Source of the DNA: Hormiphora californensis | Lineage: Eukaryota; Animalia; Ctenophora | Length of the DNA stretch: 64,000 nucleotides | Direction of reading: 5' to 3' | Assembly (NCBI GenBank): GCA_020137815.1 | Contig: CM035360.1 | Span: forward strand, 5,518,001 to 5,582,000 | In this document: piece after piece, positions 20,417-41,870 of the stretch | How positions within the stretch are numbered: position 1 is the stretch's first letter | Layout of the letters: each line of letters begins with the position of its first letter | Translations under genes and position numbers: made by a program | The notes under the pieces: model-generated | Told to the model about the DNA's origin: nothing | Seen by the model: only the letters and a program-made list of their open reading frames with translations | Databases searched by the model: none

Positions 20417-21444
20417 TAATGACGATTCAATAGATCCTATAGTTACAGGATAGGGGGACTTGATTTTACGTAGAAAATAGGGGTGTTAGAAAATATGAAA
20501 GTTAAAAAAAGATAAATCGTGTATCAGACATATGTTTTGTTTTTACCTTGTATGTATTTGTTCTTAGAAAGTGTGTGAGTGTGTTTCAAAAACAACAACG
20601 GGCTAAAATATCTTTTTAGATGATATTGATAGAGATCAACTGTGATATTATGTATGTGCGTGATATATGCGAGTGTTTTTTGTATCATATATAACTTTTT
20701 AATCTACTGATAATGATGATGATAAGATCTGTGCTGAAAGAAATATCGTGTTTATGCCTTCTCCCCCTCACTTGGCACAAAACAATGAACTCGCATTGAG
20801 CATTCTCTAGGGCGATGAGAGTTCGGTGGTTATGTGTCGGAACTCAAGTTGTATATGGGGAGTTTGACCAAAGACGTACGGCGCGACGAGGTTTTTGTGA
20901 TATGACACGTTAGCGCAACACTCGCAGCGCGCACGGATTTGGCACGCGCAAAAATCAATCCGCGCGAGTGTCGATTTTATCGCGCGGGTTGTTATTTGCG
21001 CGTGTTATTTGTTGCGCATTGTGAAGGACTGACAATTGTGTGGTTTGTACACAGTTGACAAATTCAGCGCGCGATGAACCTGGATATTTGTTGTTTTGAT
21101 GTTCTAATTTTGGAACTTGGAATCTTCAACTACACGGAGATACAGGGCGGACAAAGCCAATTAAAACAGTTGAAACGACATTGAAATATGCACTTTAGTC
21201 AATAAAAACATCCCAAAATAGTGTCTCTATCTCTCTCTCTTGGCTGGTGACTGTCTCTCTGTATTATCATCGGATCGTGTCAGGTGTTTTCCCATTTCAC
21301 TGCCACACATTCACCAGCTATAGTCACAATGTGATGCCTGCAGGAGAGAATGGGAGTTAGGAAAACATATTTCCAAGGTGAAGAAAGGCTAGAATGTGCA
21401 GTTGGGAAAACTTTGAAAGCCAATAGGCCAACAGATGGAGGGAG

Positions 21445-21474
21445 AGAGAGAAAGGGAGAGACATACTGAGAGAA

Positions 21475-21573
<99 letters not shown>

Positions 21574-22307
21574 GTAATTACCTTCGAACAGTGGAGTGTG
21601 TGTAGGAGTGTCCAAGAATAGAACACACAGACCCGGATATCTTTCAGCCTCTCTCAATAACTTCCAACACTCTGAAGGAAGGAAGAAGTGGTTAAAACAG
21701 GTCTCTGTGGGTATTAGGTCTCCCCCTCTTTCTTTCTTTCCTTGTTGGCCTAAATCTCTCTCTATTGGTATAAAACTATCTCTGTTCATCCAGCCACCCT
21801 CTCTGTTTCTCAGCAGTACATGCTTGCGTGGCTGCTGATAGGCGATAGCAAGCAACGGTATTAGCTATAAACTACCTCTCTACTCAGCTATCCATCCTAC
21901 CTCTACTATTTCCTAATTGTTACCGCATCTATCTCTCTCTCTTTCTCTCTCTACTATCTGTTATCATCTTTCTCTCTTTCACAAGCAAGCTATCTCACTT
22001 CTGTGTGTGTGTTGGCCAGTCAAGTGTTTGTTTATCAGAGTGGCCCCCAGCTAACTGCCACACTCACACTCATGATCTCACACACTGTTCTCTCAACCCT
22101 ACAGCTCACAATACACTGCCATCTCCTCTCATCTAATTATCCTATGTCTCTCACTTCCTCTCTCTCCTAATTATCCTATGTCTCTCACTTCCTCTCTCTC
22201 CTATTTTATCTCATTTCTCTTACTTCCCCATTTCTATCTGCCCTCTAGCAAGTTCAAACATGTCTCTCACTCCCCCTCTCTCTCCTATTTTATCTCATGT
22301 TTCTCTC

Positions 22308-22399
<92 letters not shown>

Positions 22400-22540: not shown

Positions 22541-22602
<62 letters not shown>

Positions 22603-22615: not shown

Positions 22616-24345
22616 GAGAGATCTTGAGTACCGGCCTCAATTCACTGTTTTTATCTCCCTGCTTGAAAAGGGTTAAACACACGCCACACGGACTGACACA
22701 CAGGAAGGACAGGCAAAGATTCTAGAAAAAACTGACAGAGAGACTCCAGGGAGTGATAATGAGAGAGATGTACAGACGAACACAGAGAGACAGGTGTTGT
22801 GCTAATAGAAGAATAGAATTAGCACACGTTGCATTACACTCACACTGACGGGACAGAATATCTGTCAGATTCACAAACATGGAACAGGTGGTGTCACATT
22901 GTGACGTCACACAGGTGTTGGACAAAAAAGAAGGAAGAGAGATACAAGAAACATAGAGACAGGGGAGGAATATAGACGTCACATTATGATGGTTTTAGAA
23001 CACGAGGGATATATTAGATCATTAGGAGTGGTTGGTATGGTTACGAATCATTAGAACGGCGGGATGAGGTCATGCATGATAATTGTCACAAGAGTAGGAG
23101 GCAGTTAAAAAAGCAAAAATAAAGAGCATGTAAAAACTAGTAAAAAGTACTAAAACGCTACTTTGAATTCTTGATTTAATTCTTTTACATTCCAAGTGAA
23201 AAACACAAGGTTTGTAAAAAAATGTCCCACCACATTCCCACAGGCACGGTAGTCCTGCACACCAAGAATCCAGAGTAGGTTTGAAAAGGTGTGAAGAAAA
23301 TAAAGCTCCTTCGTATGTCGAGAGGTTCCTGTGTCCCAGTATGGGACCGGACCCTTCACTCGAAACTCGGGGGCGAAAGTTATAAAATGTGGGGGTGTGA
23401 AGAGTACTCAAGCTTCGTCGCGGCGACGGTGCAGTTGGGTAGACGAGGAGGATGGCTACTTTTTGGCGAATCGACGGCGTATCGACGGAGGTGGTTTGTC
23501 CATTGCATATATCGTGTTCATAGTGCAGTGCCTTAAACAAATTGGGGGTAAACACTGACAAACAGGGGATTTGTGCGGAGGCCATGGAGAGATAGAGCCA
23601 GAGAGGAGAGATGGGGAGGAGGAGAAGTGTCCTACTTGGGTGGTAAAGTTGGTGAAGGTTGTAGAAGATCGCTGCGATGTGCGATGAAGGAAGGAGGGAC
23701 ACACACACGAACAGTCGGGTAGTTGTAGTAGGGGAGGAGGAGGAGGGGTCTGGCTGTATTCAGTCTCTTTTATCATTTCTTTCTCACTTCTTCTTCTTCT
23801 TCTTCGGGGGCGAGAGAGAAAAAGAGAGAGAAAGATGAGGAAACCCGGCATTATATCTCATCATCACCAACAAACCAACACGCATCTTTCTCAGTTGCCG
23901 CGACGAACGGAGGGGAGGTGTGATGATGTTGAGAAATATCTGGGCTCCAGAACACAGAGGGAGATAGTGGTAGAGATATAGAGGTATAATTGGAACACAG
24001 TAACAAGGCAGGGTGGGGTGCGATGGCAGCCGGGGGACCCTCTGGTGACATGCTGCAGGCTGCCGCTACTCGTCACGATCCCCCTCATGCATGCACCACC
24101 ACGGGGGAGGGATGAAGGAAGAGAGAGCATGTACAGAGAGAGTCTTATCATCATCATTATCACACACACAAACATAGTTATCATCAATTTAGTTCACAGT
24201 TCAACTTATACTACTACTTTACTCCTAATCTACAATTAAACCACTTTTATCAATTTGACGTTGCGAGTTCCCAGATATTTATAAAATCAAACAGTAACAG
24301 TGTGCGTGCGTTTCATCCCTAGGCTGGAAAATAGAAGGGGGGTTT

Positions 24346-27300
24346 GCCGAGAGCGCTCAGCTTGAGAAACTATGATAAAGTCGAGAACACTCGACGAAAC
24401 AGCAATCCTTTTCCCGATATTTGATAACCGAAAAGTGGCCACAATTATAACGATAGCATTTGATTTACACCAAGATCTTTAAACCTTCCCTCTCATCCTC
24501 CTGCTACAATCCCTCCCTGTCCCTTCTCTACACTACCTTCACACATAAAGAGGCCTTCTACAATTAAATATGAAGCCATTGAAATCAAGCACAGATAGTT
24601 CGACATAAAGGGCACGATGAACGCAGCTAGGGCTTAAATCACAATTTGGCCAGCTCAGAAGTCTCTCTTTCGCACGCTCACTTCACGGAATAGCATCTTG
24701 CTGCCGTACTACTCATATCGACCGGACTATATAGGGAATATATTTATATTATACCTGGTCTAAATGTCTACTAAGTTCTAATGGTGTCGAGAGGATACTC
24801 AACTAAAGGGTTTTGCCCCGGGTTTTGTGAAGTACCAAGACAAGCTTGGTTGCCGAGGGCACTCAGCTAGATACTTTATAAATTGTCGAGAGTGCTCGAC
24901 TACGACACTTCCGGAATATTAGAGGTGACCCCTTTTCTTGTTGAGGACACTCAACTAAACAGCTTCACAGACTGGTGAATCGCCCTTTTCAGCCCTTCTC
25001 AGGGTACCCCGGGCTGCACCTTTGAAGTACAGGTAGAACTACAGAATAGGTTGTCAGAACAGGATTTCATTAGGTCAGTAGGTTGGAGTAAACGGAGAGG
25101 GGTTCAGAAGGGTTTTCAGAAGGTTTATTTCAGAAATATCATCCCAGTGAAGGGTTACAGGAATTGGTCAGTACATCAAGCAGAAATTGCCGAGAACACT
25201 CAGCCATCGGGGAGTTGAGATTGCTCAACTTTGTAGAATATTGAGAACACTCAACTCAGTTCCCATGGAGGTAATTCCTCCGGTGTATTGGGAACAAATT
25301 TGTATGGATTGTTGAGAATACTCAACTGTTTAACTTGGTTGAGAACACTCAACTACCTCAGGCTTTCTGAGGGGTTTTAGCCCTTTTCTCGCGATCCCCT
25401 GAGTAGGGATCGGGAGTGCGTTGCTAGGATACTGAGAACACTCAGATAACTTATACCAGAACAGATACTATCTACCTTGGGGCCCAGTAGCAGTCTCATC
25501 GACATTGCCAGCTGGGTTATTGAGAATTCTCAACAATTTGATCTTGTACTGGATATTTGTCGAGAACACTCAACGCCATAGAACTGGCCAGAAACCTTTT
25601 TCCCGATTCTTTCGGCATTTGCCCTGAAAGAAGCTGGACTGTTGAGAGCACTCAACGAAGGATCAATAGAAATTTGGTCGAGAACACTCGCCTCGAGAAC
25701 ACTGCCACTGGCAGTGTTGCTCTGATTTTTCTTCGGTTGAGAATGCTCAACTATGGAACTTTTACGGAGTAATTCTCCAAATCTCCAAATCTCTCAGTGA
25801 GGAACACTCACCCTAGCACAAGCCGCTGGCTAAACACTAGAAACCTTTAAATCGAGAACACTCGACTAAATTCCTTAGCATTCTGTTCCAAGCTTGGAAC
25901 GAATCTGGTTGAGAATACTCAACTATTTTTGGTCCTTTTGGGATATAGCGCCAGTGCTGTGCATGTTGCGCTGTAGGGTGCTGCGTGTCCTCCAATGGTG
26001 GACAAGAAGAGAGATAGAGATAAAAGAAAGCGGAGATCGACGCCGTCGCAGCACGGGCCGATGAAATACCGCGATCAATTGCAGGCTGTTACCGTTGGGC
26101 GCTTGTCGCTGACAAGTTTTGAATTTGAAAGACCAGCCAATTCAAGTTTACCAACTTCCAGAGCCATACGTTCCGTTTGTAGGTCAATGGTGTAACTCTC
26201 TTCGATGTAGTGCGTGGACTCGGTGGCCAACAACACACTGAATGTAAACACCTAGCCTGTTTGTAAATCCCCGCTGGGATTACTAACATGTGACACATAT
26301 ATTGTAAGGTAGCCCGCCTGTGGCAGGCTGTGTCAAAATTGTTCATGGTTGTAAGGCTGTCAGGGTTTGAATTTGTTTTAGTCCGTTTTGCAATGTCCAT
26401 TTCGAAGCCATAAGACCCAGGGAAAGATGAAGACGACCAAGGACCGATCCAATATTCCACTTGCAATGTGCTACCGTAGTTGGCGAGAGGGGTAACCCGC
26501 CGGTTTCACATGATTGGCACGCGTTTCCAAGGCCACGTAATGGCACATCGCCAGCAAAGAATGACCGCATTTCATGCATGGCCGGGAACAGCAAGATGTT
26601 CAACGCAGCAGGTAAGACGGGATAAATTATTCTTCAGCGTAACACGTTGGGCCCAAAGCGACAATCGGGGTTCGCTCGAAATACACAAATCGGAAACACG
26701 GAAGTCCGTTATAAGCGGCGCAAAATCGTTGGGCTGTAGTTCCTATGAATGACATGCCAGGCAGCAGTTGATGTCGAGAACACTCGACTTTGTTTGGGGG
26801 AATAGATGTTTGTTGAGAGCACTCAACTAATAGGGTCCTTTTGTTTGGTATCAGGGGTTTGTATCTTCGAGCATTCTGCCGATGCTAGCCTTTCTGGGTA
26901 CCCCGATAAATCTGCGAGAGTAGTGCTGACACGTCTTCGAATTCAGTGTACTATCATGGTGAACGGTTACACATCCATTAGGGCTGACATGTACACACGT
27001 GCCGAGAGAGAGAGATAGAGAGGAGCTGATAATCCTAAAGGGGTGAAGATCAGCGTTGTGAGGGTATGTGTGAGAGAGAGAGTAATGCAAAGTGTGAGAT
27101 GTCATACCACGATATACCGTATACCAAAGAGGATGTGTTTCTGCTCCAAATTGTGCTTGTCCTCCATTTATGGGCTCGGGGGCCTAGTGTGCAACGGGAA
27201 TTTCCTGACGGTTATACCTCACTCTCTGTGGACCAACAGGACATTACATCAAACAATCGCTCTCTCATCACTTCTACCAGCAGGAATTGCTGAAACCCTG

Positions 27301-28240
27301 AAACAGCAACAGGGCTGACATCTCTCTCACAACTATTTAGTTAGTAACGGGAGTTTGCAGATACCAATACAATTATTCCACGGACACCACTTGTAATACT
27401 ATAACTGTGTGTAGTCAGAGATCTGAACATCACCATAAACCACGGACGGAGAGAGATCCATAAACACAGGACGGGGGGACATCACTATCTCTCTTGCTCT
27501 CACCATAACACCAGGGGGGACGGGACGACGTCTGTGCTGCCGAGAGTTCTCAGCTAATAGTAAAATAGAAGGGGTTGTCGGGAGCGCCCGACTGACTTGT
27601 GACCTTTTCAACGGAACCCTTGAGTAACACCGCGTGCAAACATACACATGGGGGCAGTCAACTAACGATCTCTCTCCCCACCACTGGACTACGACCTGGG
27701 ACGAGGGACAACAGGTATGTACATCTCTCTCCCGATATATTATCTCCCCGTGCGATCCACAGATCCTACATGAAGATGTTCACCTCTCTGGGCAGTGAAG
27801 GGGGTGTTGAGAGCGCTCAACTGGTTTGTGGGTTAGAAGATATATGAAGGTGTTGAGAACGCTCAACTAATATCCAACCTTTGCTAGTCGGTCTCTAACT
27901 TTAACCCCTCTTATCTCGTGCGATGTTGGTGCGATGCTTCCTCTTACATGGCGTTATCTTATCTCCCTAGCTCCCTCCTTCTCCAGATACTCCCCAAGTT
28001 TTGTGATGTTGAGAACTCTCAACTAATAAATTTGGTTTTAAAGTTTTGTCGAGAACACTCAACTGTCGTGGACCCTTTTCTTTTTTTTTCTTTCTCTCTT
28101 CCTTCTCCCCTCTTAGTAGCTAGATACATCTCTCTGTCAACCCGTCGCGTTATTATCTTCTGTCGAGAACGCTCGACTTAATTTTATAGATTTATAGAGG
28201 GCGTTGAGAACACTCAACTTGGATTGGGGGCCTTTTCTTT
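24346..28240 (-). other. Hairpin-motif block 1: ~30 copies of a 6-bp stem/4-nt loop element (minus-strand consensus GYYGAG-NRYY-CTCRRC), many linked to an upstream (G)AAAAG|G
   Basis: Copies at about 24346, 24380, 24786, 24852, 24885, 24940, 25189, 25214, 25240, 25311, 25338, 25431, 25519, 25559, 25641, 25677, 25736, 25796, 25851, 25908, 26773, 26812, 27538, 27577, 27806, 27852, 28008, 28048, 28162 and 28203. Flanks are non-homologous. Function is inferred, not shown. Confidence 0.85.
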
Positions 28241-29576
28241 CCCAGCACATATCAGCTCTCGGATAATCCCGGCTAGTCTCGCTCATATATATTCCCTGGT
28301 GACTGAGTAGTGTGTGCAGTATTTATGCTTCAGATATATCAGCGCCCCGCCCGGCTGTAAGTGGCGCAACTCTCTCCCAAGCGACAGATCTCTCATCATC
28401 AATCCAATACCCCTGCTGTGCACACAAAAGGTAGAAAGCAAGCCACACAATAAGATTGTTTTGTGAATCGATATAACATTGGATGAAGTTTGCGGCCGGC
28501 AGACGCACTTACCAAAAAAGTTAGGTTTATACGTCGAGCTTGCACGTGTCATATCGCACCGCAATTATCACATTTTCTAAACACCGAACCTGATGGATCC
28601 CTAGCTCCTCTCTCCCATCCCATGATGTTGATATCCCCTGCTGGTGAAACTGATCCTATGACCCCTCTCTACGGTAACAAATCTCCTTATAACCACCGTG
28701 TGTGTATCAGATGTCCGAGTTGTGCGAAAGAAATTGGTGAAAATTCTGAAATTTGAGTTGGTATTGAGCAGCGAAGAAAAATTTGTTGCCAAATCAACGT
28801 TGATAAGGAGTGCGATTCGGTCGGAGTGGTTGGTCCCACCTTCATACCTTAGTGCAATGAGTACAAGTCCCCTGTTTGATGGTTTAGTTTGAGCTCAGTG
28901 AAGAGAGATAAGAGAGCGAAGAAAATGTCGAAAACAGATCTGCTGGCAGCGTGGAAATGGTGCTCAGCGACACATGCACATGAAGCTGCGAACTCCGCAC
29001 TGTAAGAAAAGATGAAATGCTGAACTCTTGCTCTGAAAATGGTTGGGGAATTTTAGGTTTAGGCGTCAAATCACAGCTGTCGTTTTTGACATCAATGATC
29101 AATTGCATATCAAGGTGCATCAAATCTGACATTTAGTTACCATTTAGTGTGTCTAATTAGAGATGATGATGGCGCACTCTTAATCGACTTTGAATTTCAC
29201 TCCTTCAACTCTTGATCTTGTACGCGATGAAAACTATCTATCCACTACTCCTGACGACTGATACCCTGACATCCCTGATACCCGATTCATCGAACAATTT
29301 TCGAATCTGACTTCCGTTCAAATGCAAAGGTGATGGAATTTTCAACCAAATTTGACCTGAAAACATAACCATGCCATAGCCATAAATTCGATCTTGAAAA
29401 GGAGTAGTCGATAGAAATCGGAAATCGTTGCATACCTGAACCATCTGACCTCCAGTCACTGTTCTCCCTTCAACTTCACACACGTCTAATACACGTCCTG
29501 ATCCTATCGCTGTTCAGATTCTTTGTACTTGCTAGCACTATCGTCTTCATAAGAAAAGGAAGGGCAGTGGCGTTTC

Positions 29577-29960
29577 TTATCAGTGAAGGCAGCTAGGTAT
29601 TCTTTATCAGTGAAGGCAGCTAGGTATTCCTTATCAGTGGAGGCAGCTAGGTATTCCTTATCAGTGAAGGCAGCTAGGTATTCCTTATCAGTGAAGGCAG
29701 CTAGGTATTCCTTATCAGTGGAGGCAGCTAGGTATTCCTTATTAGTGAAGGCAGCTAGGTATTCCTTATCAATGAAGCCAGCTAGGTATTCCTTATCAGT
29801 GAAGGCAGCTAGGTATTCCTTATCAGTGAAGGCAGCTAGGTATTCCTTATCAGTGAAGGCAGCTAGGTATTCCTTATCAGTGAAGGCAGCTAGGTATTCC
29901 TTATCAGTGAAGGCAGCTAGGTATTTCTTATCAGTGAAGGCAGCTAGGTATTCCTTATCA
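29577..29960. repeat. 27-bp minisatellite, ~14 copies
   Basis: Unit TTATCAGTGAAGGCAGCTAGGTATTCC. It generates the spurious KAARYSLSV ORF. Confidence 0.95.
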
Positions 29961-30449
29961 GGTCCTTCTAAGGCAGTGCGTTGCGTCTACTTGATAACTT
30001 CAGCCAGGCCTGTTTAGGTGCAGTGCTGTTGGCGTTCAACTTGTGTAGACAAAAACCTGAGGAACAAAGATAATGTAGATGGTCTGGAGTCAAGATCATT
30101 CAGATTTCAAAAAGAACAAGATAAATCGTTTGTTTAGAAAGCCAGTTCTAGTACCTGTTAAAAAGAGGACCGGAGTAGTTTTCCCTTGCACGTGGTTAGA
30201 TCCTACAGGCGAATTATCACTCCCAATATCGATTCTACTTCTCTTGATCTTGTAACCCTCCAAACTTTGGATGCTGTAACAAAACCCCTCTCAGATGTTC
30301 TCCCCTGCGCTTTTCGTGACAGTCCTTATGTAGGGCGTAGGCCAATGAATACTTTCCAGACGTTTCATACAAATGTTACTGCACGTTTTCTATTTCTCTC
30401 ACAACTGGCAATTGGGTTTGTTTTTGGTGAACCGACACACAGGTTTTAC

Positions 30450-33400
30450 CATTGAAGATGTTGGTGGGAGCAGGTCTTACAACGAAGCTTTGTCGAACGC
30501 CCAAGTTGAATAAGGGAATGAAGCATGGTGGCATGTTTTCGGTTCAGTGTGTCTTACTCGTTCCTGTCAAACATAATTAGACCCACCCAGAACCCAGATG
30601 CAGAAACTTGAAGTCATCAGATTCAAAACTTACAGTGGAATCACATGCTGTTTATTGTCCGACTTTCCAGGCCTCATGTCCTACTCATGTTTCTGAAACC
30701 CCGTCCTATGCTTTTCTGGGAGATCCTAACAGTCCTCACACCGGCCTGCTAAACTGGTTATGGAATTCAAACACACACACAGGGCTCACCAATCGATCAA
30801 GCGGGTCTTGCATCGAAGCTTTGTCGAACGCCACATCACGAGATAGGGCAGTGCACTGGTACCAAGAGGTCTTTACAGTGGGATGGTTAGAAGGCTGACT
30901 TAGGTTCTGGTAAAGCTGTGTCTTATTCCCTGCAACTCAGTGAAAAAGGTTCACCCAACCCCACCCAGAAAGTCAAAGGATCGATCGCGATTACTCATAC
31001 CAGTGTTTCAAGAATTCCTTTCGTTGCAAGTTCGATGCGGATGTATCGGTGCTATCAACTCTCACGTGTGCCACGATTCAATTCTGTCAACAGGGTTATC
31101 CCACCCAACCCATGGAAAAGCGAGAAGAATGCAAGAGGAATCAATTGTAATCTAGGCACTTTACCGAACTCACGGGATCCAGTCAAATGGTACAGCAGTT
31201 GGGAATTACTTCGATTCAGTTGGTCCATACACGGCTAATCTTTGTACCCATTTTCAATCAACACTGTAACAGAGTGAACCCATTTCCCGCCCGAAGATCT
31301 GAGATTTAAATCAAGCATGGTTTTCTTAGCTGACTGCACGATGGAAGTAGGTGAAATAGGTCCTAGCTCCTGACGCTGTTTCATTCTGTTCAATATCTCG
31401 TCATTCTCATTCAGCTCTGCCAAAATGGTTAGCCCAAACCACCCGAGTTTTGAAATTGAAGGAGAGAGAAAATGTGAATCCAGTGAAACTCACAGGTCGA
31501 GGGAGAGATAATTGAAGCGGGTCTTACGACGAACTTTATCGAGTGCCATGGATCGGTGGGTAGAAATTCTGGGTTGTTCCTATTTCCGTCACTATTAGCT
31601 CTGTGAACATGGTTATAAGATCCCTTACCCTCCCCAAAAGTAGGTAGCCTATCGGATTGTGGTCGGTCGGTGTCCTTCCTTACTGTCACAGGTCACTTCA
31701 TCAAATTCCATGGATACTAACAGTCCAATTCGTAACATCCTACGTGATCTCTGTACGGCTCTGTCAACAAGGTTAGCCCAACCCATGCCCAGGGGAATGT
31801 TTAAGAGGGGGACGAAAATGGGAGAGATACCAGGTATATGGCTGATGATGATGGTAGAGAGAAGAAGGAAAACTGCGACGAACCCAGGAAATAGCCATCA
31901 TCATAACCTCTGATACTGCAATACAATCGTCTACGGTCTACTGTATGAATTTGCGTCACTAACAAGCTCTCGTCACTTAAGCTCTGCCAACAGGGTTAGA
32001 CCAAACCACCCGATTACCGAAAATATATGGGAAAATTTGCAGGGATTCCAGAAAAACTCACATTTCGAGGGAGAGAGAAAAGCCGGTGATCCTAAATGAT
32101 GGCTGTAGCCTGCAACTCCTATTTTAACTCGAATTCATCTGTTTTTACCGTGAATGAAGCGGGTCTTACGACGAACATTATCGAGTGCCATGGATAGGTG
32201 GGCAGAATTCCTTGATCGGGTAAATTTGTTCCTGTTTTTATCACTACCTGCTCTGTGAACACGGTTATAAGCCCCGTACCCTCCCCAAAAAGTGATGGCA
32301 GATGGATGCTTACTATCTTGGCAGGTCAATGTCCTTACTGTCATTTCTTCAACTTTCCAACGTGAACAAATCTCCGATTCGTAACATCCTACGTGATCTC
32401 TGTACGGCTCTGTCAACAAGGTTAGCCCAACCCATGCCCAGGGGAAGTTTAGAGGGGGGAAGTTAGAGGGATAAATGAGTTAGATACCGGATGATAGGCG
32501 TCAGGCGATGATGGTAGAGAAGGAAGAAGGAAGAACTGCGACGAACCCAGGAAATAGCCATCATCGGAAACCCTAATACTGCAAGACTGCTTTACACTCC
32601 TTTACACTCTACTGCTTAGTAACACTTCACTGTTTCATTCTGTTCTATCTCAGTTCAGTGCCATGTATCGGTGGGTAGAATTCCTGGATTGTTCCTATTT
32701 CCGTCACTATTAGCTCTGGGAACATGGTTATAAGACCCCTTACCCGCCCCAAAAGTAGGTAGCCTATCGGATTGTGGTCGGTCGGTCCTTCTCTTACTGC
32801 CACTTCATCAAATTCCACGGAGACTAACAGTCCAATTCGTAACATCCTACGTGATCTCAGTACGGCTCTGTCAACAAGGTTAGCCCAACCCATGCCCAGG
32901 GGGAAGTTTAGAGGGGAAGAAAATGGGAGAGATACCAGGTAGATGATAGGCGATGATGATGGTAGAGGGAAGAAGGAAAACTGCGACGAACCCAGGAAAT
33001 AGCCATCATCATAACCCCTGATACTGCAATACAATCGTCTACGGTCTACTGTATGAATTTGCGTCACTAACAAGCTCTCGTCACTTAAGCTCTGCCAACA
33101 GGGTTAGACCAAACCACCCAATTACCGAAAATATATGGGAAAATTTGCAGGGATTCCAGAAAAAAACTCACATTTCGAGGGAGAGAGAAAAGCCGTGATC
33201 CTAAATGATGGCTGTAGCCTGCAAATCCTATTTTAACTCGAATTCATCTGTTTTTACCGTGCTTGAAGCAGGTCTTACGACGAACAATATCGAGTGCCAT
33301 GGATAGGTGGGCAGAATTCCTTGATCGGGTAAATTTGTTCCTGTTTTTATCACTACCTGCTCTGTGAACACGGTTACAAGCCCCGTACCCTCCCCAAAAA

Positions 33401-36000
33401 GTGATGGCAGATGGATGCTTACTATCTTGGTAGGTCAATGTCCTTACTGTCATTTCTTCAACTCTCCAACGTGAACAACTCTCCGATTCGTAACATCTTA
33501 CGTGATCTCTGTACGGCTCTGTCAACAAGGTTAGCCCAACCCATGCCCAGGGGAAGTTTAGAGGGGGGAAGTTAGAGGGATAAATGAGATAGATACCGGA
33601 TGATAGGCGTCAGGCGATGATGGTAGAGAAGGAAGAAGGAAGAACTGCGACGAACCCAGGAAATAGCCATCATCGGAAACCCTAATACTGCAAGACTGCT
33701 TTACACTCCTCTACACTCTACTGCTTTGTAACACTTCACTGTTTCATTCTGTTCTATCTCAGTTCGCACGTCGTATTTAGCTCTGCCAACAAGGTTAAAC
33801 CAAACCACCCGATAATTACAGAGGATAGAAGAAAATGAGAGTGATTTCAGTTAAACTCACGATTCGAGGGAGAGAGAAAAGTTGGTATTGTAGGATCCTA
33901 GACGATAGTTGTGGCCTGCAAATTCTACTGTAACAGTCTCAAATTGTGGAGCAACACCGATCTGTTTCACTGTGATTGAGGCGGGTCTTACGTCGAACTT
34001 TATCGAGTGCCGTGGAACAGGCCAAGATGAAGAATAATGCATTTCAGTGTGTAGAATCAGATGAACTTTTTCGTACTTCTATCATTATCAGCTCTGTGAA
34101 CACGATTAGGCCCCAAAACCGACCCAAAAGAAGTGATTGATCTTACTATCTTGGTTGGTCCTTAGTGTCCTTACTGTCATTATATCTCCAACGTGATTAA
34201 CGTGCATACATCTCTCCGTTTCGTAACATCTTACGTGACCTCAGTACGGCTCTGTCAACAAGGTTAGCCCAACCCATGCCCAGGGGAAGTTTAGAGGGGA
34301 AGTTAGAAGGGGGAAGAAAGAGAGAGATACCGGATGATTGGCGAAGATGATGGTAGAGGAAGATGGTAGAATGATAAACTGCGACGAACCCAGGAAATAG
34401 CCATCACCGGAACCCCTCTAAGCTAAGACTGCTCCATACTTCATAATCGTCTGCTGAACTGCATGGCTTTGTGACACAGGGTTGATCATACTTAGTAGTG
34501 GATTCAGGCGGGTCTTATAACGATTCCTTGTCGAATGCCTTTCAGTGCAGTGGGATGGGGTAGCGGCCAGCGTGCAGTTATTTGGTGGGTGGTTAGTTAT
34601 CAAGCACGTTTCAACTGTTATCACCTTCGTGAACAGGGTTAGCCCTATACCCTCCCCAGAATATCAATTGAATTTGTTAGCCTAGCTTCTAGTCACTGTG
34701 AGAAATATGCTCGCCTGCTCAGATGGTTGGAGAGAATACAACTTCTTCATTTCCTTACTGGTCCCAGATGAATGCCCCAGCTGTCTTTGGAATCTCCCAA
34801 CGTGTTCAACTCTGACAAAAAGGATTAGCCAAGCCCTTAGCCCACCCAGAGAAGAAAGCATTACCAATATCATAGGGGAGATATACCCTTAGCTGCAAGC
34901 TGTTGTTATAGCAGATCTTATCAGTGCAATCCCTGTTCAATATCCTCTATCCAACTAACTGAGGCCAGGTATTTCCAGAGATATGAAGACAAGGCAATGA
35001 CGACTTTTATTCGTGGCTGATCCGTGATCGTTTGCAACACCACTTTCTCACTCTTTCATCTGACAACAAAGTTAGAAAACACCCACAGCCCAATCATCAA
35101 TGAAGTTACCAGACAGCTACAGTCAGAACTCAGAGAGGAGCGAAGTCACTTTTCTTCATACTGCCGGTACCTTCCCAACCTTGTTAGCTCACTCTGTCGT
35201 TCACAACGTTCTGTCAAAAGGGGTTAGCCCTACCCACCAATGAGAGATAAGAATGTAGACGATAGACTTACTTATGTCAGTGCTGTTCATCAATTGGTGC
35301 GATATTCAGTACAAGCGAGTTGTCTTAGCAGTCCTAACTGTTTAACGATCAGCAATGAAACGCAGGTTGGTTGTATGGCGTGCTTCTACCTGGTTCCATT
35401 TCAGTATAATACGCTTCACCTCTGTGGAACACGGTTAACCCAACCCGCCCAGGAAATGATGGAAGAGTTGAAGTAGAAGAGAAATGGATGATGAATGATG
35501 GTTACCAGTTGGATGACGATGATCTGCGATGTCCTATGCCTGTATTTCTAATCTTCATAGATCTTTATACCGAATCTGATGGGCTGGTTTAGATGATACA
35601 CGTATTTAACCAAGGTTTAGATGCAGTGGGTTAACGGACTAGTCTTGTGTCCTTTTCAGATAATGTAGTATTTTGCTTGACAGACAATGATAAATGCCGT
35701 ACCGCATAACCTGTACTGTCAAATATCGGTTAGTAGCCCAACCCCGCCCAGACGATCCTCATTCCCAGCAACCAAATTATAGACGTCTTTTTAGAAAACT
35801 ACGAACCTCATCAGGCTAATTTCAGAGATGTCTTACAATCAATTTCCGGATGTCATCCTAATAGTAAGGACAGGTCTTACAACGAATCTTTGTCGAACGC
35901 CACATCGCAAGCTCAGCATCGTAGGGTCCTATTGCTTTTACTCCAACAGCTCTGCCAAATAGGGTTAGCCAATCCCGCCCAGAAAACTTCAAATTGATGT
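30450..36000 (-). other. Tandem array of ~24 short exon-like cassettes (G-rich + CTAAC branchpoint + CAG|AG acceptor; GTAAG/GTGAG/GTAGG donors)
   Basis: Plus-strand motif CTCTGYSAAMANGGTTAGCCCAACCC (minus: GGGTTGGGCTAACCTTGTTGACAG|AG) recurs every ~150-350 bp. Donor-like GGTCTTAC, GTCCTTAC, CATCYTAC and AAACTCAC motifs lie between copies. The core (31400-34400) is a three-cassette unit repeated ~5 times. Confidence 0.7.
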
Positions 36001-36903
36001 GAGGAAGGTGGCATAAAAGTTGAATATTTCCAAATTCCAGAGGATAATTATCCTTGTCTGGCCAGTGCCGTAATTTGCAAGAGACTTGGGAAATGCTATC
36101 GAGCGTGTCTAATTTTCTGTTTCCTCTTAGGGCACGTGTCAACTCCGATCGCGGTGCATGCTGATTTGTGGACAACTCCGTGACAGGCAAAATGCGTCTA
36201 TTGCGAAAGGGATAAACCTGAAAAGGGATTGGAGAGCTAACGCAGTGATACTTTGAAAAAAAAAACAACTAACGATTAAGACCATTTATTATTACACCAA
36301 ACTAAGACTTTGCAATTTACCTTGAACAGGTATTCAAATTATTCCGGGAAGCGATCTAACTTTAATTTGTAATCTTTAATTTCTTGGTTCTGAAAATAAA
36401 GCCGATATAAAACATGCGAGGACTATGAAATAAGAGAGATTGGAGTGACCAAAAGTTTATGAAAATATGAAAAGTGGGAAACAGAATATTACCTAGATAT
36501 GATGGATTCCGTCACTCCAAAGGCTGATATTTTATCGCATGGCAGTTTGCTCGAAGATGAGTGCAGATACATTCATGTTCCTGATACCAGTTCAGTGCAA
36601 TCTCAGAATCACCCAACAGATGCTTCCCATACAACACCCCAGTCCTGATCCTTACAAATGTCGGAAAGCAATCCCGGTGGTGGTGGTGGCTCGCTAGAGA
36701 ACATTACGCGAGGGTGCTCACAAAAATTGTTTAAACTAGAAACTGACATGCTTGCGACGAAGATAGAAGGCATTAGAATTAGAAGTCAGCATATTTAGCC
36801 CAATGGAGATGTCGAATGAATGTCAGCTTAAATTAAACACATGGAAATTAGGGAGGCCGAGAACATGCAATTAGTGCATATAATATGTAGGGGGAGGTAA
36901 GTT

Positions 36904-39900
36904 AGTGAGGACACTCACTTGGTTCGAGAACACTCGACGCACCTTTTCAGCCTTATGCCAACCAGACGCAAAGGCAACCAAGCACACAGCATAGCTCTAG
37001 GCTACCGGCTATCAAGCCCCAATCACCACATGGATATATGAAACCACAGCGTAGAGGAGAGCTTAGAACCCGCTGACAGCTACAGGTTGCCTTCGGATCC
37101 AGCTATTCAGGCCCCAGAAATCTGGCTGTAGAAAACAATGAAAAGAAAGAAAGTGTTTGGGTGGTGAGAGCGCTCACCTGGAGTCGAGAACACTCGACGT
37201 TACCTTTTCTTGGCCTTTTCTTTTATTATAACTGATGGTCAGTTATCCATGACCAGGATTTAACACTATCAGTATCGGGCGTCCGAAGGTCTATAGCAGC
37301 TCTCAAGCTCCGCTAAACTGTGCCATATCACAAACTCAAGTCGTGGTTTATCAAGTTGTGGCAGGTAACAGCTCGCGATAATACCAAGACGTTCACTATC
37401 GACCAACGGCAAGTTATTCTGTAAAGAGTATCAGCACTGATTCTCTGCTCGACTAATATTAATATTTCTCGTGTCTAAAATACGGCTGCACAATATAATT
37501 GTAATACACGTATTATTAGCCGTTATCGGGCGGATAAGTATTTAGACTAGGGGCTAAGCCCACAACTTTTCTACTGATGTTACGAAATATTGACCGGAAT
37601 TCGGACATTACACAACAGTGTGCAAAAACAGCCACACAGTGTGGATCAGATTCACATAAGGCATACCAAACATTGGTAGCATTTCTGAACATCGCAAAGC
37701 GATTCAATATTTCGAATAATATGAGCACACAGACTCAACTCACTTCAACTGAGTGGTATCATTGGACGCTACGAAGGCGTAAACATTTTCACTACAAGCG
37801 ACTGTAGCTGTCAGAAATACACGTTAAAATAACCTTGAAGGATCAAATACCTTCACAATTTTGCTCGCATAGCGGCTGACTGAACATTCAGGTTGTTATC
37901 ACAGACCTCTGTACGGGTGGTAGAATTTTAGTGGGGAGGCAAGTACGCTTGCAATAGTAGCTGTCACGACGTCACGCTGAGGTGGTTAGGCCACTGAAAG
38001 AAGTTCAACTTTTATCAACCCCCTTTAAAACATTAAACTACAGATACTTCATTACCAATTAGCTTACGGCTTGGTTGCTGAGAGTGCTCAGCTGAGAATA
38101 TAGATGGATGTTGAGAACACTCAACTGCCAATATGTGACCTTTTCTTGCCACTAAGGCTTCATGAGATAATGTAGAACGGGCCGTGTTAGTCAGGCACTG
38201 TAGGTTGAGTGTTGCGGATATATAAACTTGCATGCTGGATATTATGGCATGTTCCAAATTTTCCTCAAATTTCCTCTCCTAAGAGGTTTAAAGTATGTCA
38301 AGAATTTGTGTCAGTGTACACTGTATTTTCATTTTCCCTCACTCAAACAGTGGGCCTCATAAACTCTCAAGAGTCATGTCAGATACTTATTTCGTTTGGG
38401 TCGAGAGCACTCGACAGAGATAGAGCCTTTTCGGGGTGGCGCTATGTCGGGTTGGAAAGGCTGGAAGTGGGCGAATGGATACGGCAAGTAGTGGTTGAAG
38501 GTGGTTACAGCGAGGAGGACAGGCGAACGTTTGATTGCAGGGATGTGTAGCGGGGTGTCTGCTTGAAGGCGATTGAACACACACACTGGAAAAATGGATT
38601 GCATGGTGTCAGAGGTGGATATATAAAAGAGTTGGCTGTACTTGCCGAACTGATACACACAATATTACCAGACTTATCTGGGTTGGGCATGAGCTGTCAT
38701 GGTGGCTGTTGCTGTGTTTGGGCTCCTAGAGCTGCACTGATTGGTTGTCGGCTGTGTTGGCCTTCTCAGAACCTGCTGAGAGCACTTTGAAAAGAAGGTT
38801 TTAAAACACTGCATGTCTGATACATGGTTACCACGCTATACCCAAAGCCCTGAATGGTTGAAGGATAGTCGCTGTAAATTTTCCTATCACACAAGTGTGT
38901 TCTGTGGTCCAGGGCTATCCAGCGGGGCCATTAAATGCCAGCGCCTGACAGAAAAAGGAAAGAGATATAGGAGGCTTATCGTCAGCTTGCCACTCATGAA
39001 AGCAATTAATTTTTTGTTCAGATTAAAAATGAACTACCTATCCTATTCTTACTGTACGTTGAGAACTCTCAACTGTTTGTTTGGGCGAGTTGATCATATG
39101 CTGAGAACACTCAGCTGAGCTTGGACCTTTTTGAAAATGCCAGAGCGGCAGAGCCAGGGTCAAAGAATACATTGGAACGGCAGCGGGGAGAGAGAACATA
39201 ACTCGTAAGCAGTAGAACATGTGCACTGAAGGGGATACACCAAGTTAACATTTAATGACGAGCAGGGGCAAGCATAGATACATGTGGGTTACCTCGAATA
39301 TATATATATAGTTACCCAACGGTATTACTTATTGTACACTCTGTGCAGTAGACGAATCACTCTTTATCACTAGGTCTTCTGTTTGCTACAACACTCTCCA
39401 GATAGACAAATATAGATGTATCAAGCCCCAAAATAACGGTTCCTTTCGGAGGTAGAACAACAAACCATGTGTAATATATTTATCACGTGTTGAGAGTGCT
39501 CAACTTTGAACTAGATTTACATAGAGGTTGTGTTGGGAGCGCCCAACTAGATCACAACGGTGGGCCTTTTCGTTTAGATTTTAGAGAGATCTCAAACGGT
39601 AGCTTCCTGCTTCACATGAACCGGTCTGTAAACAGAGAAAGATCGAAAACAGAATGTGATGTTTTAGTTGACCACGGGTGGTTGTGTGTTGCAGGGAAGG
39701 GCGGGTTTCCAAATGCCAATCATAAAATAGTACTTAGAATTTGAAACCACTGATTGATTTGCGGCAGTAATGCAGTTATATGATAGATGCATAAGAAGTG
39801 TAGCGCAGGTCCAACAGGTATAAATCAAACCGTCCAGGCATAGAAATATATATAGAGAGAGATAGATAGAGTTCTGTAACGAGAGAGAGAGATATAGATA

Positions 39901-41198
39901 CATATTTATATATAGATGGCAGCCATCGAGGGTTTTAACTCGCTGCTGAGAACTCTCAGCTTGTCGTGGGGGCCTTTTCCTCTGAACCAGGAGAGTTCAG
40001 GTAACATGCATGCAACACGAAACAGCTCGGGATGGAGATATGGAGGCGATAAAGAGAGGTGGATTGAGTCACAGGTGTTTCAACAGCTATCATACGCTTT
40101 TTTTTCTCTCGCTTATCAGGAATTGGCACATCTCAGATCTGATCAACGCAAAGGGGGATGAAAGTTACCAGGATCACACAATGAGGTGAGAGTGGGGGCC
40201 CATGCGGCTACAATTGCTGCTCTGTGTATGTTGCCTGGGAATAGTGTTTCTGACAGATAAAAGCTGGTAAAAAGTATGGCCCCGTTTTGGAGATGATGAT
40301 GATTATTGATAAATACACGCTGCAACATTACCAAATCGAAGGGGGAAGAGTGAAAACATCTACCACAGCTCATCTAACCTTGCGGAGGCGGGAATCAAAA
40401 GAGCAGCCTGGGAGAAATAGAGATATATTCTCACGTATACACTGATATAGAGATAGAGTGGACATTTATATATCTGACTCCACGGGGGAGGAGGGTGCTC
40501 GCTAAGAAATATATCATCACGGTTGTATCTGAATTTAGCCACTTCAATATTAATCTGATGGATACATGTGCTGCACAGATCAGATGGGGGAGAGATAACT
40601 CACAACCAGCGGGTCCATGCATGCGCCTAGATCTCTCTTGTTATCTTTCTGCTGTTATATCTTTACACTATATCTTTGTTATATATCATGCTCTTCAGAC
40701 GACGGTAGAGATACGTATATCTATATATTATGTTTATTATAATTCCATATATTATATTTCTTTGTGCTGATCTCTGTAAGAGATGATTGAATATATGCCG
40801 AGAACGCTCAGCTGTAATTGTGGGCCTTTTCATTTAAAGGAATATAAAAATTCTAAGAACATACCCCTGCACACACGGCGTGCTCACTGATCCAGAAACA
40901 GAGACTGAAAAAGGATTTCGTAAGGACGATATAAGGAAGTTACAATTTCAGGATTTAAATTTAGATCTGCGATAAGATTTCAGATATTTCAAAAGGATTA
41001 TAGATCGATAGACTTCAACTTTCAATTTCACGAGACAAAAACAAGACCAAACTTTCTCTGGAAGTCACAAAAACAAAGTTACCCCATTTTCGTTAACTCA
41101 CGCTCTTCTCATACTTTTGTCATCATATTATATCGATATTATATATATTGTATATTTGGATTGTTAGTGTCGAGAACACTCGACGATGATACCTTTTC
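36904..41198 (-). other. Hairpin-motif block 2: ~14 copies, nearly all linked to GAAAAG|G
   Basis: Copies at about 36904, 36923, 37163, 37183, 38077, 38110, 38400, 39058, 39100, 39489, 39532, 39945, 40797 and 41169. On the plus strand each single copy or pair is followed by CCTTTT(C) within ~2-18 nt. Confidence 0.85.
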
Positions 41199-41289
41199 TC
41201 GTATAAAAATGATCTGAAACACCCGATAAAAACACCCCCGTTCGTGCTTCCATCTCCAAAAATCAATTTCGACCAAAATCAGAAGAAGA

Positions 41290-41870
41290 GAAAAACATTC
41301 GCTCGAACACGCGTGTACCGGTACATGCGCGACGATATTGCGAAACACTCACAGCGCGAATAATAAATGGGTGTGGATACCCCAGACAATCACAAAACAC
41401 TGCTTCCATTAACTATCAGGTTCATCACATATCACGAGAAGAATAATAGCATAACAAACATAATCATGTGATTTTAGCGTGTATCAGTCTGTCAGTTTGT
41501 GTGTGTGATTTTAGCTGCTGGTGAAACAAAACATAGCGAGACGGAGAGATAATGATGTTGAAGAAATTACACATGCCTCTAGAGGCTTTAGATCACGCTC
41601 ACGTGGGGTCACATGACACAAAGCACATGACAAATGTAAGCCAATTAGAGCACGATTCGAGAGCACATGACACAAGAACACACACAAAGAAACGAGCACG
41701 AGAAGACAGTGGACGCGTTAGAACAGGTCACGAGGTATCGCTCGACGTCAAGGGCAACCTCTTGCGGAGGAGATCTGGCATGAGATTTCAAATAATAAAT
41801 CACAGCGCGCAGCTGCGCGCTACAATCTACGAATTGCGCGTCACTATCATTTGACGCCGCGCAATAAAAG
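41290..41870. promoter_or_regulatory. CpG/CGCG-rich intergenic segment, possible (bidirectional) promoter
   Basis: Local enrichment of GCGC/CGCG between the last hairpin block and VPS33. Inferred from composition and position only. Confidence 0.3.

What the first reader, a model, noticed from the sequence alone, without database searches (positions are those of the whole stretch)
21000..41300. A ~20-kb gene-free locus organised into blocks of minus-strand splicing-like signals: candidate undescribed RNA-processing system
Seen: no convincing long ORF, yet an ordered layout read on the minus strand from a CpG-rich segment at ~41300. The order is hairpin block (41200-36900), acceptor/donor cassette array with no hairpins (36000-30450), 27-bp minisatellite, degenerate coding-like exons (29500-28560), second hairpin block (28240-24340). 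The two block types use opposite donor styles. One has a strong exon side and weak intron side (GAAAAG|GN plus hairpin). The other has a weak exon side and strong intron side (GTC|, ACA|, CAC| or AAT| followed by GTAAG/GTGAG/GTAGG). Known: 5' splice sites fall broadly into AG|GU (U5-loop favoured) and |GURAG (U6-favoured) classes. Inference: one long, combinatorially spliced, largely non-coding transcript that may act as a splicing sensor, switch or decoy. A decayed multi-exon gene or a ssDNA-hairpin system are alternatives.
Basis: partly seen in the sequence, partly recalled or inferred. Interest (0 to 1): 0.9.

Follow-up and report, generated by a model that had tools for sequence, protein, structure and literature searches.

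The report
Conserved hairpin-studded ctenophore non-coding RNA
This 20-kb "gene-free" stretch of a comb-jelly chromosome is a conserved, transcribed, conventionally spliced non-coding RNA gene carrying about 45 copies of a small RNA hairpin that the genome's retrotransposons also carry, so it more likely binds or soaks up a hairpin-binding factor than represents a new splicing system.

Summary

**Hairpins.** About 42-45 hairpins of 16 nt (A-GYU-GAG-NRYU-CUC-ARC-A) lie in two blocks, 41.2-36.9 kb and 28.2-24.3 kb. They fold on the minus strand only: non-Watson-Crick pairs are 15 G.U against 0. Their outer pairs covary. Stems change four times more slowly than flanks between near-orthologues.

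**Module.** Most hairpins sit in a module of G-AAAAGG-U, 7-13 nt, hairpin, a G-poor linker, then a second hairpin. Diverged relatives from marine metatranscriptomes keep this module in the same order. The central motifs are kept in Pleurobrachia bachei.

**Splicing.** RNA contigs run colinearly through every "GAAAAG|G donor" they cover. Only 62% of these sites have GU. Three ordinary GT-AG introns of about 100 nt are removed from the minus strand. The hairpin blocks are therefore giant exons of a non-coding gene, head-to-head with VPS33.

**Retroelements.** The same hairpin occurs in the UTRs of a LINE, an LTR element and a third RT element in this genome (137 sites against 6 in the control).

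**Best reading (about 0.45).** A NORAD/Gomafu-like multivalent RNA platform or decoy for a hairpin-binding factor that retroelements exploit.

The central array of branchpoint-like and donor-like motifs is real and conserved; whether it is spliced is untested beyond its edges.

The parts
41000..42100 (.). CpG-rich intergenic region between the non-coding gene (minus strand) and VPS33 (plus strand, ATG near 42535). Probably a bidirectional promoter. The exact transcription start is not mapped.
   Evidence: CpG observed/expected is 1.4-1.6 against 0.66 for the locus. RNA contigs of X5, X9 and X10 run past 41400. Sec1-family exon at 43160-43672 on the plus strand.
36493..41400 (-). Giant exon carrying hairpin block 1. 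It holds 14-16 hairpins from 41184 to 36904, most in AAAAGG-led single or double modules.
   Evidence: Colinear RNA contigs: X1 39883-41385, X5 36530-38257 and 39043-40319, X9 37484-39012. L009 covers 39051-36493 at 94.5% identity. Hairpin list.
36390..36492 (-). Canonical GT-AG intron of 103 nt, removed.
   Evidence: The joint 36389->36493 has ends CT..AC on the plus strand, seen in X1 and X5. X1 depth is 0.57 inside the intron against about 6 beside it. L009 jumps from 36493 to 36394.
36173..36389 (-). Exonic sequence downstream of intron 1. It diverges faster than the hairpin exon.
   Evidence: L009 positions 2554-2773 match 36394-36173 at 81% identity.
30400..36000 (-). Central array. It holds 25 copies of motif A (G-runs + CUAAC + UGUUnACAG), 4-5 copies of motif B (UCGAYAAAGnUUCGUYGUAAGACC) and many GTRAG words. 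It includes a 1.1-kb tandem duplication of 94-96% identity at about 31540-33700. It has no hairpins and no conserved reading frame.
   Evidence: Both motifs are unique to this locus in the genome. Both are present in Pleurobrachia bachei gene models, where motif B is read in two different frames. The X1 RNA contig 35728-36006 is colinear across one acceptor-like and one donor-like site.
29576..29961 (.). 27-bp minisatellite of 14.3 copies at 96% match. Whether it is exonic is unknown.
29033..29140 (-). Canonical GT-AG intron of 108 nt.
   Evidence: L005 joins 29141 to 29032. The sequence is read.
28848..29032 (-). Internal non-coding exon of 185 nt.
   Evidence: L005 alignment.
28746..28847 (-). 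Canonical GT-AG intron of 102 nt.
   Evidence: L005 joins 28848 to 28745. The sequence reads AAG|GTATGA...TTTCAG|.
23706..28745 (-). Giant exon carrying hairpin block 2, with about 28 hairpins from 28218 to 24346. It includes a dense cluster at 25920-25190. The 3' end is not mapped; it lies between 23706 and about 20400.
   Evidence: L005 is colinear over 28747-26266 (88.7%) and L007 over 26545-23706. Hairpins. The KIF13-like exons are on the plus strand up to about 20400.
39145..39167 (-). A 23-nt block (UGGCUCUGCCGCUCUGGCAUUUU) just upstream of the AAAAGG of the 39112 module. It is identical in four diverged lineages.
   Evidence: Alignment of the window with L010, L014 and L016.

Best explanation
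The locus is one long non-coding RNA gene, or possibly two adjacent ones, of a cydippid-type ctenophore. It is transcribed on the minus strand from a CpG-rich promoter shared with VPS33. It is processed by ordinary splicing of a few introns of about 100 nt. Its two giant exons display about 45 copies of a 6-bp/4-nt RNA hairpin. These are mostly organised as modules of G-AAAAGG-U, 7-13 nt, hairpin 1, a 16-28 nt G-poor linker with a YCUAU word, then hairpin 2.

Shown: the transcription, the splicing, the RNA-level selection on the hairpins and AAAAGG, the conservation of module order across diverged lineages, and the presence of the same hairpin in the UTRs of three retroelement classes.

Inferred: the RNA works as a multivalent platform, sponge or decoy for a protein or complex that recognises this hairpin. 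Retroelement RNAs also recruit that factor, for example for export, stability or translation of unspliced RNA. The central array of branchpoint-like and 5'-splice-site-like motifs may likewise hold splicing factors without being spliced, as in Gomafu.
For: **Non-coding.** No ORF has a domain match. There are 85-118 stops per frame in the centre. Motif B is translated in two frames in the P. bachei models.

**Transcription and splicing on the minus strand.** Three GT-AG introns are removed. Contigs from 4 of 4 RNA runs of 4 studies cover the locus. X1 lacks the intron, so it is RNA. The stretch is held by 20 runs from 10 studies.

**Hairpins are RNA structures on the minus strand.**
- Non-Watson-Crick pairs are 15 G.U + 7 mismatches on the minus strand, against 0 G.U + 22 mismatches on the plus strand.
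- 37 of 44 GAG-N4-CUC cores have all three outer pairs, against 1 of 22 elsewhere in the window.
- 42 cells carry double changes, against 7.3 in shuffles.
- One orthologous hairpin has A-U changed to G-C.

**Purifying selection against near-orthologues.** Sites changed: stems 2.8%, AAAAGG 4.5%, loops 12.2%, all other sites 11.7%. Fisher p = 1e-12. Stem changes keep G.U pairing.

**Diverged lineages.** Only the modules and a few flanking blocks align, and they lie in the same order.

**Module uniqueness.** The full module occurs only at this locus.

**Bare hairpin elsewhere.** It occurs 137 times genome-wide against 6 in the control. It sits right after LINE ORF2, after an LTR pol and beside a third RT ORF. 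Similarity is limited to the hairpin and its flanking A residues.

**Linkers.** They are 5% G against 22% background, as expected for segments kept single-stranded.

**Precedents.** NORAD repeat units with short conserved stem-loops (PMC4947167). Gomafu UACUAAC repeats binding SF1 (PMC3116199). Retroviral and cellular CTEs (PMC4338338).
Against: - No binding partner is known or predictable from the sequence.
- Loops evolve at the neutral rate. That is unusual for loop-reading RNA-binding proteins and fits a purely structural role as well.
- High abundance is inferred only from assembly in small metatranscriptomes. No silent control stretch could be laid.
- One of the LINE hairpins (GCUGAG..CUCAAC) pairs better on the antisense strand.
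- Continuity of block 1, the centre and block 2 in one RNA is not shown.
- The hairpins could simply be cis-acting export or stability elements for an RNA whose real function lies elsewhere.
Confidence: 0.45

Rival explanations
1. First reader's model. A combinatorially spliced transcript uses two donor styles (GAAAAG|GN + hairpin, and weak-exon|GTRAG) as a splicing sensor or switch.
For: Splice-like words are strongly enriched on the minus strand of the centre. AAAAGG is complementary to the U5 loop 1 sequence as I recall it (from memory, not tested). Contigs drop rare isoforms, so minor spliced forms cannot be excluded.
Against: Every covered GAAAAG|G site is read through by RNA contigs in X1, X5 and X9 and in L005, L007 and L009. 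Only 62% of sites have GU. Many 'exons' in the centre would be 17-18 nt, with 2-3 donors each. The verified introns use ordinary UUUCAG acceptors without motif A. The cassette at 35728-36006 and motif B at 30.5 and 30.8 kb are colinear in RNA.
Confidence: 0.1
2. The hairpins are cis-acting elements, CTE-like export, stability or anti-decay signals. They only let this long, poorly spliced RNA accumulate. The function lies elsewhere, for example in the central array or in the act of transcription next to VPS33.
For: The same hairpin sits immediately after ORF stops in unspliced retroelement RNAs, where export or anti-NMD elements are expected. CTEs are shared by retroelements and cellular RNAs (PMC4338338).
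Against: About 45 copies with a conserved upstream AAAAGG, a fixed order of orthologous modules and a module form unique to the locus is far more than a cis element would need.
Confidence: 0.2
3. The locus is a precursor cut at or near the hairpins into many small or medium RNAs, as in a polycistronic small-RNA host gene.
For: There are regularly recurring structured modules with G-poor linkers. The host-gene-like repeated units of the centre recall SNORD116/115 hosts (from knowledge).
Against: There is no Rfam or tRNA match apart from low-complexity noise. The stems are only 6 bp. Contigs of 1.5-2.6 kb span many modules at even depth. Linker sequences are not conserved between lineages.
Confidence: 0.1
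4. The locus is an expressed graveyard or trap of retroelement UTR fragments, like a piRNA cluster, without function of its own.
For: The hairpin is shared with three retroelement classes.
Against: Similarity to the elements stops at the 16-18 nt hairpin. No retroelement ORF remnants are present. The hairpins are in sense orientation. The modules are orthologous, ordered and under purifying selection across lineages, while the flanks are saturated.
Confidence: 0.05
5. The palindromes are double-stranded DNA sites for a dimeric DNA-binding protein, or ssDNA hairpins.
For: Conserved half-sites GAG/CTC around a variable 4-bp centre look like a dimer site.
Against: The outer positions covary within each site. 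All wobble pairs fall on one strand, 15 against 0. A duplex DNA site would not produce this. The elements are in expressed RNA.
Confidence: 0.03

Closest known systems
NORAD (mammalian lncRNA, Pumilio/SAM68 decoy; PMC4947167, PMC8192489)
   Same: Both are conserved, readily detected, largely unspliced long non-coding RNAs built from a dozen or more repeat units. Each unit combines a short single-stranded motif with short stem-loops that carry structure-preserving substitutions. In both, the spacers diverge while the motifs are kept.
   Different: There is no sequence relation and no UGURUAUA motif. This locus is about four times longer and has two hairpin blocks plus a separate central array. 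The bound factor is unknown. Localisation and copy number per cell are unknown.
Gomafu/MIAT (tandem UACUAAC branch-point repeats binding SF1; PMC3116199)
   Same: The central array keeps 21 CUAAC branch-point-like words (25 motif A copies) inside RNA that is not spliced there, at least at the array's edges. This recalls Gomafu's exonic branch-point repeats.
   Different: Exact UACUAAC occurs only once. Motif A also has G-runs and a CAG. Donor-like GUAAGA motifs are present too. SF1 binding was not tested. The interior of the array was not covered by my one reads call.
Constitutive transport elements of simple retroviruses, IAP-type elements and NXF1 intron 10 (PMC4338338)
   Same: A structured RNA element is shared by unrelated retroelements and a cellular RNA. 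In the retroelements it lies downstream of the coding region of unspliced RNA, and it is reiterated.
   Different: A CTE is a long stem of about 100-160 nt with internal loops, whereas this is a 16-nt hairpin. No NXF1 link was tested. The copy number here is about 45.
Histone mRNA 3' stem-loop and Roquin CDE-type decay hairpins (from knowledge)
   Same: The geometry is the same class: a 6-bp stem with a 4-nt loop, as in the histone stem-loop. The design is a conserved upper stem, a Y-R-Y-rich loop and a freely covarying lower stem, as in the CDE.
   Different: The sequence differs: GAG/CUC with an NRYU loop, against GGYYYU/UYUN or UUC-YRY-GAA. The copies are internal and multiple, not at an mRNA 3' end. 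No histone gene is nearby.
Xist A-repeat (from knowledge)
   Same: Both have tandem short double-hairpin units separated by pyrimidine/A-rich linkers in a long non-coding RNA that recruits a protein.
   Different: The A-repeat is one compact array of 7-9 near-identical units. Here the modules are dispersed over two 4-5 kb exons with unique sequence between them.

Membership tests
Spliceosomal 5' splice sites (for GAAAAG|GN) | Near-invariant GU (rarely GC) at intron positions +1 and +2 | tested here: not met
   The base after AAAAGG is U in 26, C in 9, A in 6 and G in 1 of 42 modules from six lineages.
Spliceosomal 5' splice sites (for GAAAAG|GN) | Exon-exon junctions at the site in RNA | tested here: not met
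   Contigs of X1, X5 and X9 and loci L005, L007 and L009 are colinear across all covered sites. The only joints are three GT-AG introns elsewhere.
Alternative cassette-exon array (central 36.0-30.4 kb) | Acceptor and donor motifs used as junctions | tested here: inconclusive
   The edge cassette 35728-36006 and motif B at 30.5 and 30.8 kb are unspliced in X1 and X9 contigs. The interior was not covered. Contigs cannot show minor isoforms.
Protein-coding gene | An open frame conserved between species, or a domain match | tested here: not met
   No Pfam match. There are 85-118 stops per frame in the centre. The P. bachei 'proteins' read motif B in two different frames. Two ORF searches found nothing.
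Dispersed transposable-element family | Copies of the unit elsewhere in the genome | tested here: not met
   The full module patterns and covariance model R1 hit only this locus. Motifs A and B hit only this locus. Only the bare 16-nt hairpin is dispersed, inside retroelements.
Known RNA families (Rfam 15), tRNA | A covariance-model match | tested here: not met
   There are four sub-threshold hits. The strongest (snR86, 61 bits against a gathering score of 120) falls on TC/GA microsatellites. No tRNA was found.
Repeat-module decoy/scaffold lncRNA (NORAD-like) | A conserved non-coding transcript made of repeated units with motifs under purifying selection | tested here: met
Repeat-module decoy/scaffold lncRNA (NORAD-like) | Demonstrated multivalent binding of a specific RNA-binding protein, with an effect on its other targets | not testable with these tools
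   This needs pull-down or CLIP and perturbation.
Branch-point-repeat lncRNA (Gomafu-like) | Tandem UACUAAC in an exon, binding SF1 | tested here: inconclusive
   There are 21 CUAAC words against 4.8 expected, and 25 motif A copies. Only one is an exact UACUAAC (35749 copy). Exonic status is shown only at the edges. Binding is not testable here.
piRNA-cluster-type transposon trap | Nested transposon fragments make up the locus | tested here: not met
   BLAST of the retroelement UTRs against the locus aligns only 14-27 nt around hairpins. No RT, IN or APE remnants are present.

The most novel reading that the evidence does not exclude
There is host-retroelement RNA mimicry. An ancient ctenophore lncRNA displays about 45 copies of the very hairpin that LINE, LTR and a third RT element place in their UTRs. 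It competes with them for the hairpin-binding factor. This would be an RNA-decoy arm of genome defence, or the reverse: the retroelements copied a host 'self/export' tag from this RNA. Its central array in parallel sequesters splicing factors.
Probability: 0.2. Interest if true: 0.85.

Novelty: new variant of a known kind. Interest (0 to 1): 0.6.

Why it matters
Conserved, structured lncRNAs with clear covariation are rare anywhere.

This one offers an unusually clean handle. It has a 16-nt hairpin with compensatory changes, a fixed upstream motif and dozens of orthologous copies. The same hairpin has been recruited by three unrelated retroelement classes.

Identifying the factor that reads the hairpin would reveal a post-transcriptional pathway of an early-branching animal. 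It would also show how that animal's retroelements use the pathway.

The work also corrects gene models. Two Pleurobrachia bachei 'proteins' in EukProt are translations of this non-coding array.

Tried and rejected
- **Coding.** ORF lists and Pfam gave nothing.
- **Known RNAs.** Rfam and tRNA scans gave nothing credible.
- **Virus.** The module pattern is absent from IMG/VR.
- **Recombination or back-splice joints at hairpins.** Rejected. The loose ends match the flanks of paralogous modules at 24.9, 27.5 and 27.8 kb, and motif B copies at 30.5 and 30.8 kb. They are short partial alignments.
- **The 152-nt skip at 36961->37114 (X10 only).** It has a 5-nt direct repeat and GG..GG ends. It is a deletion or template switch, not splicing.
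- **The extra genome hit C2:5311038.** It is not a hairpin.
- **Eleven of the 21 metagenome loci.** These are unrelated chance matches with no BLAST similarity.
- **Consensus fold for motif A.** None was found.
- **Cross-pairing of the two hairpins of a module.** This appeared as one MFE alternative. It is disfavoured because 15 of 23 modules have different outer stems in hairpins 1 and 2.
- **dsDNA palindrome.** Rejected on the G.U strand bias.
- **Contigs of the central array through spurious ORFs.** Two word-index searches were blank.
- **Synteny through VPS33.** I searched one exon by reference only and joined no exons. Only contigs of 2.2 kb or less came back.

Full report
**Setting.** The window is G000:C11:5518001-5582000 of a 110.7-Mb, 45-contig genome. 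Other agents of this scan took it for a ctenophore. I support that indirectly. The only library proteins resembling translations of the locus are two Pleurobrachia bachei (Cydippida) gene models in EukProt. The stretch also turns up in marine and seawater RNA libraries from ten studies.

Flanking genes:
- Sec1/VPS33 exons lie on the plus strand from about 42.5 kb.
- KIF13-like coiled-coil exons lie on the plus strand up to about 20.4 kb.

A minus-strand gene in between is therefore head-to-head with VPS33 and tail-to-tail with the kinesin.

- There is no ORF with a domain match, no tRNA and no credible Rfam match.
- The hairpin core pattern gives 39 hits against 4.1 expected, and 38 of them lie in 24349-41184.
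- Read on the minus strand, the hairpins are NNN-GAG-NRYU-CUC-NNN, with a 6-bp stem and a 4-nt loop.
- The centre (36.0-30.4 kb) has one such core only. It holds 25 copies of GGGnGGGuuGGGCUAACCnUGUUnACAG and several copies of UCGAYAAAGnUUCGUYGUAAGACC.
- In the centre, GTRAG, CTAAC and CTAAY..CAG are enriched on the minus strand well beyond simulation.
- The 27-bp minisatellite, a 1.1-kb tandem duplication and the CpG-rich segment are all there.

**The hairpins are RNA structures under selection.**
- Among about 45 hairpins, the non-Watson-Crick pairs are 15 G.U and 7 mismatches on the minus strand. On the plus strand they are 0 G.U and 22 mismatches.
- A test free of my selection rule: of 44 GAG-N4-CUC cores in the blocks, 37 have all three outer positions paired (about 5% expected). 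Elsewhere in the window the figure is 1 of 22. In five related loci it is 43 of 45.
- On 89 hairpins from six lineages, outer pairs switch between U-A, C-G and U.G, and pair 5 switches between A-U and G-C. That gives 42 double changes against 7.3 in shuffles. Slid registers collapse to 35-49% paired.
- In one orthologous hairpin (window 39548), GUUGGG..CCCAAC replaces the GUUGAG..CUCAAC of two other lineages.
- Against three near-orthologous RNA contigs (75-94% identical), the share of changed sites is 2.8% in stems, 4.5% in AAAAGG, 12.2% in loops and 11.7% at all other sites (Fisher p = 1e-12). The stem changes are A/G or C/U switches that keep a wobble pair on the minus strand.

**The module.** The unit has these parts:

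| Part | Finding |
|---|---|
| Upstream motif | G-AAAAGG, followed by U in 62% of sites |
| Spacer to hairpin 1 | 7-13 nt |
| Linker to hairpin 2 | 16-28 nt, 5% G against 22% background, often with a YCUAU word |
| Consensus fold | RNAalifold returns just the two hairpins, with AAAAGG invariant and unpaired |

Exact module patterns and a covariance model built from 23 modules hit only this locus in the genome.

**Transcription and processing.** I had one reads call, on 35500-41400, with four runs from four studies.
- All four gave contigs. The long ones are colinear with the genome: X1 39883-41385, X5 36530-38257 and 39043-40319, X9 37484-39012. All cross several 'GAAAAG|G donors'.
- The one clean joint is 36389->36493. 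It has CT..AC ends on the plus strand, so it is a GT-AG intron on the minus strand. X1 and X5 both show it.
- X1 has depth 0.57 inside that intron against about 6 beside it, so X1 is RNA.
- A scan of JGI metagenome and metatranscriptome contigs with the module pattern brought 21 loci, ten of them related.
- L009 reads 39051-36493 and then 36394-36173, with the same intron removed.
- L005 reads 29269-29141 | 29032-28848 | 28745-26266. That defines two more GT-AG introns, of 108 and 102 nt.
- L007 reads 26545-23706.

Both hairpin blocks therefore lie inside exons of 5 kb or more in spliced RNA. The proposed donors are not used in any dominant form. The other 'joints' and loose ends at hairpins, and at 35871-35906, match the flanks of paralogous modules or motif B copies. 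They are partial alignments. As a by-product they show that 24.9, 27.5, 27.8, 30.5 and 30.8 kb are expressed too, and that motif B's GUAAGA is retained there. The X1 contig 35728-36006 is likewise colinear across one motif A and one motif B. I could not test the interior of the central array, nor whether one RNA links both blocks.

**Conservation.**
- In L003, L008, L010/L012, L011, L014 and L016 (GC 0.35-0.46), BLAST aligns only 50-200 nt around modules. Yet the modules recur with the same design.
- Where anchors exist, the modules are in the same order and at similar spacing. Window modules 40809, 39957, 39576 and 39112 correspond to L014 843, 1726, 2135 and 2463.
- A 23-nt block upstream of the 39112 module is identical in four lineages, while the sequence beyond it is saturated.
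- The central motifs are old as well. The two P. bachei models carry motif A three times and once, in both of its sub-types. They carry motif B twice, in two different reading frames. This is nucleotide-level conservation, not protein-level.

**The retroelement link.** The bare hairpin is not private to the locus. GTTGAG-N4-CTCAAC occurs at 137 sites in the genome against 6 for the reversed control, and 15 of those sites are in the window. The sampled sites outside the locus lie in:
- a LINE, with an APE+RT ORF2 ending at L023:7369, followed at once by five or six hairpins;
- an LTR element, with six hairpins 300-770 nt after the RT-RNaseH-integrase ORF (L027);
- a third RT-encoding element, with two hairpins just 5' of its ORF (L030, L031);
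- ORF-less arrays of five hairpins.

Similarity to the locus stops at the hairpin and its flanking A residues. The locus is therefore not made of retroelement debris. Three unrelated elements and a conserved host RNA use the same small structure. I described these elements only and built no consensus.

**How it most likely works.**

Shown: a conserved, expressed, spliced non-coding RNA whose selected features are a short single-stranded motif, two small hairpins and G-free linkers, reiterated about 20 times (about 45 hairpins).

Inferred: such an arrangement is what a multivalent binding platform looks like. NORAD has repeat units with short covarying stem-loops (PMC4947167). Gomafu has exonic branch-point repeats that hold SF1 (PMC3116199). 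The lncRNA would then concentrate, buffer or compete for it.

I put this at about 0.45. The purely cis-acting reading gets 0.2. The remainder goes to the transposon-trap and DNA-site readings.

Weak points:
- The loops drift neutrally.
- No partner is known.
- Abundance is indirect.
- One LINE hairpin pairs better on the antisense strand.

Noticed in passing
L023:7370-7900 (G000:C3), L022, L025, L026: A LINE (ORF1 with a weak OSK/SGNH-like hit, ORF2 with APE+RT) carries a reiterated unit of about 195 nt directly after the ORF2 stop, holding GUUGAG-N4-CUCAAC hairpins. One hairpin type (GCUGAG..CUCAAC) has a C-A mismatch on the sense strand and a U.G pair on the antisense strand.
   Followed up: partly
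L027:4573-5041 (G000:C12): An LTR-type element (RT, RNase H, integrase) has six copies of the same hairpin downstream of pol. The sequence just 3' of the hairpin (AYCCCGUUA..) resembles that in the LINE.
   Followed up: partly
L030:5495-5589, L031:4648-6578, L029 (G000:C1, C5): A third RT-encoding element (RVT_1 plus a weak C1-like zinc finger, ORF of about 1000 aa) has two of the hairpins just upstream of its ORF. Its class was not determined.
   Followed up: partly
L024:5123-5604 (G000:C1:285122-285603) and four similar places: Arrays of five hairpins without a nearby long ORF. They may be a non-autonomous, SINE-like derivative of the LINE tail.
   Followed up: no
EukProt EP00116_Pleurobrachia_bachei_P014225 and P006660 (P0005, P0006): Two annotated Pleurobrachia bachei 'proteins' are translations of the non-coding central array. 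Motif B is read in two different frames within one model.
   Followed up: partly
window 39990-40010 (-) and L010:631-680, L014:1686-1735: A second conserved small hairpin (CUGAAC-loop-GUUCAG), preceded by GCAUGCAUGUUAC, lies just upstream of the AAAAGG of the 39957 module in three lineages.
   Followed up: no
L016:4100-4506 and L011:2350-2444: The related loci also end in short tandem repeats (ATCTACCC-type and a 31-nt unit). Minisatellites may be a recurrent part of this gene in relatives.
   Followed up: no
window 5110-8217 (-): An intact-looking Helitron Rep/PIF1-helicase ORF of 1035 aa.
   Followed up: no
window 54453-59786 (+): A single 1777-aa ORF combining a ZNFX1 domain, a superfamily-1 helicase (AAA_11/AAA_12) and a PARP catalytic domain.
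   Followed up: no
G000:C6:8447218-8451532: A satellite whose unit contains GGGTAACCATGGTAACAGAG. It surfaced as a one-mismatch hit to motif A and is unrelated to the locus.
   Followed up: no
window 21438-22621: GA and TC microsatellites in inverted arrangement (arms of about 100 nt, 90-98% complementary, about 740 nt apart). They lie at the left edge of the finding. They are not shown to be part of the transcript.
   Followed up: no
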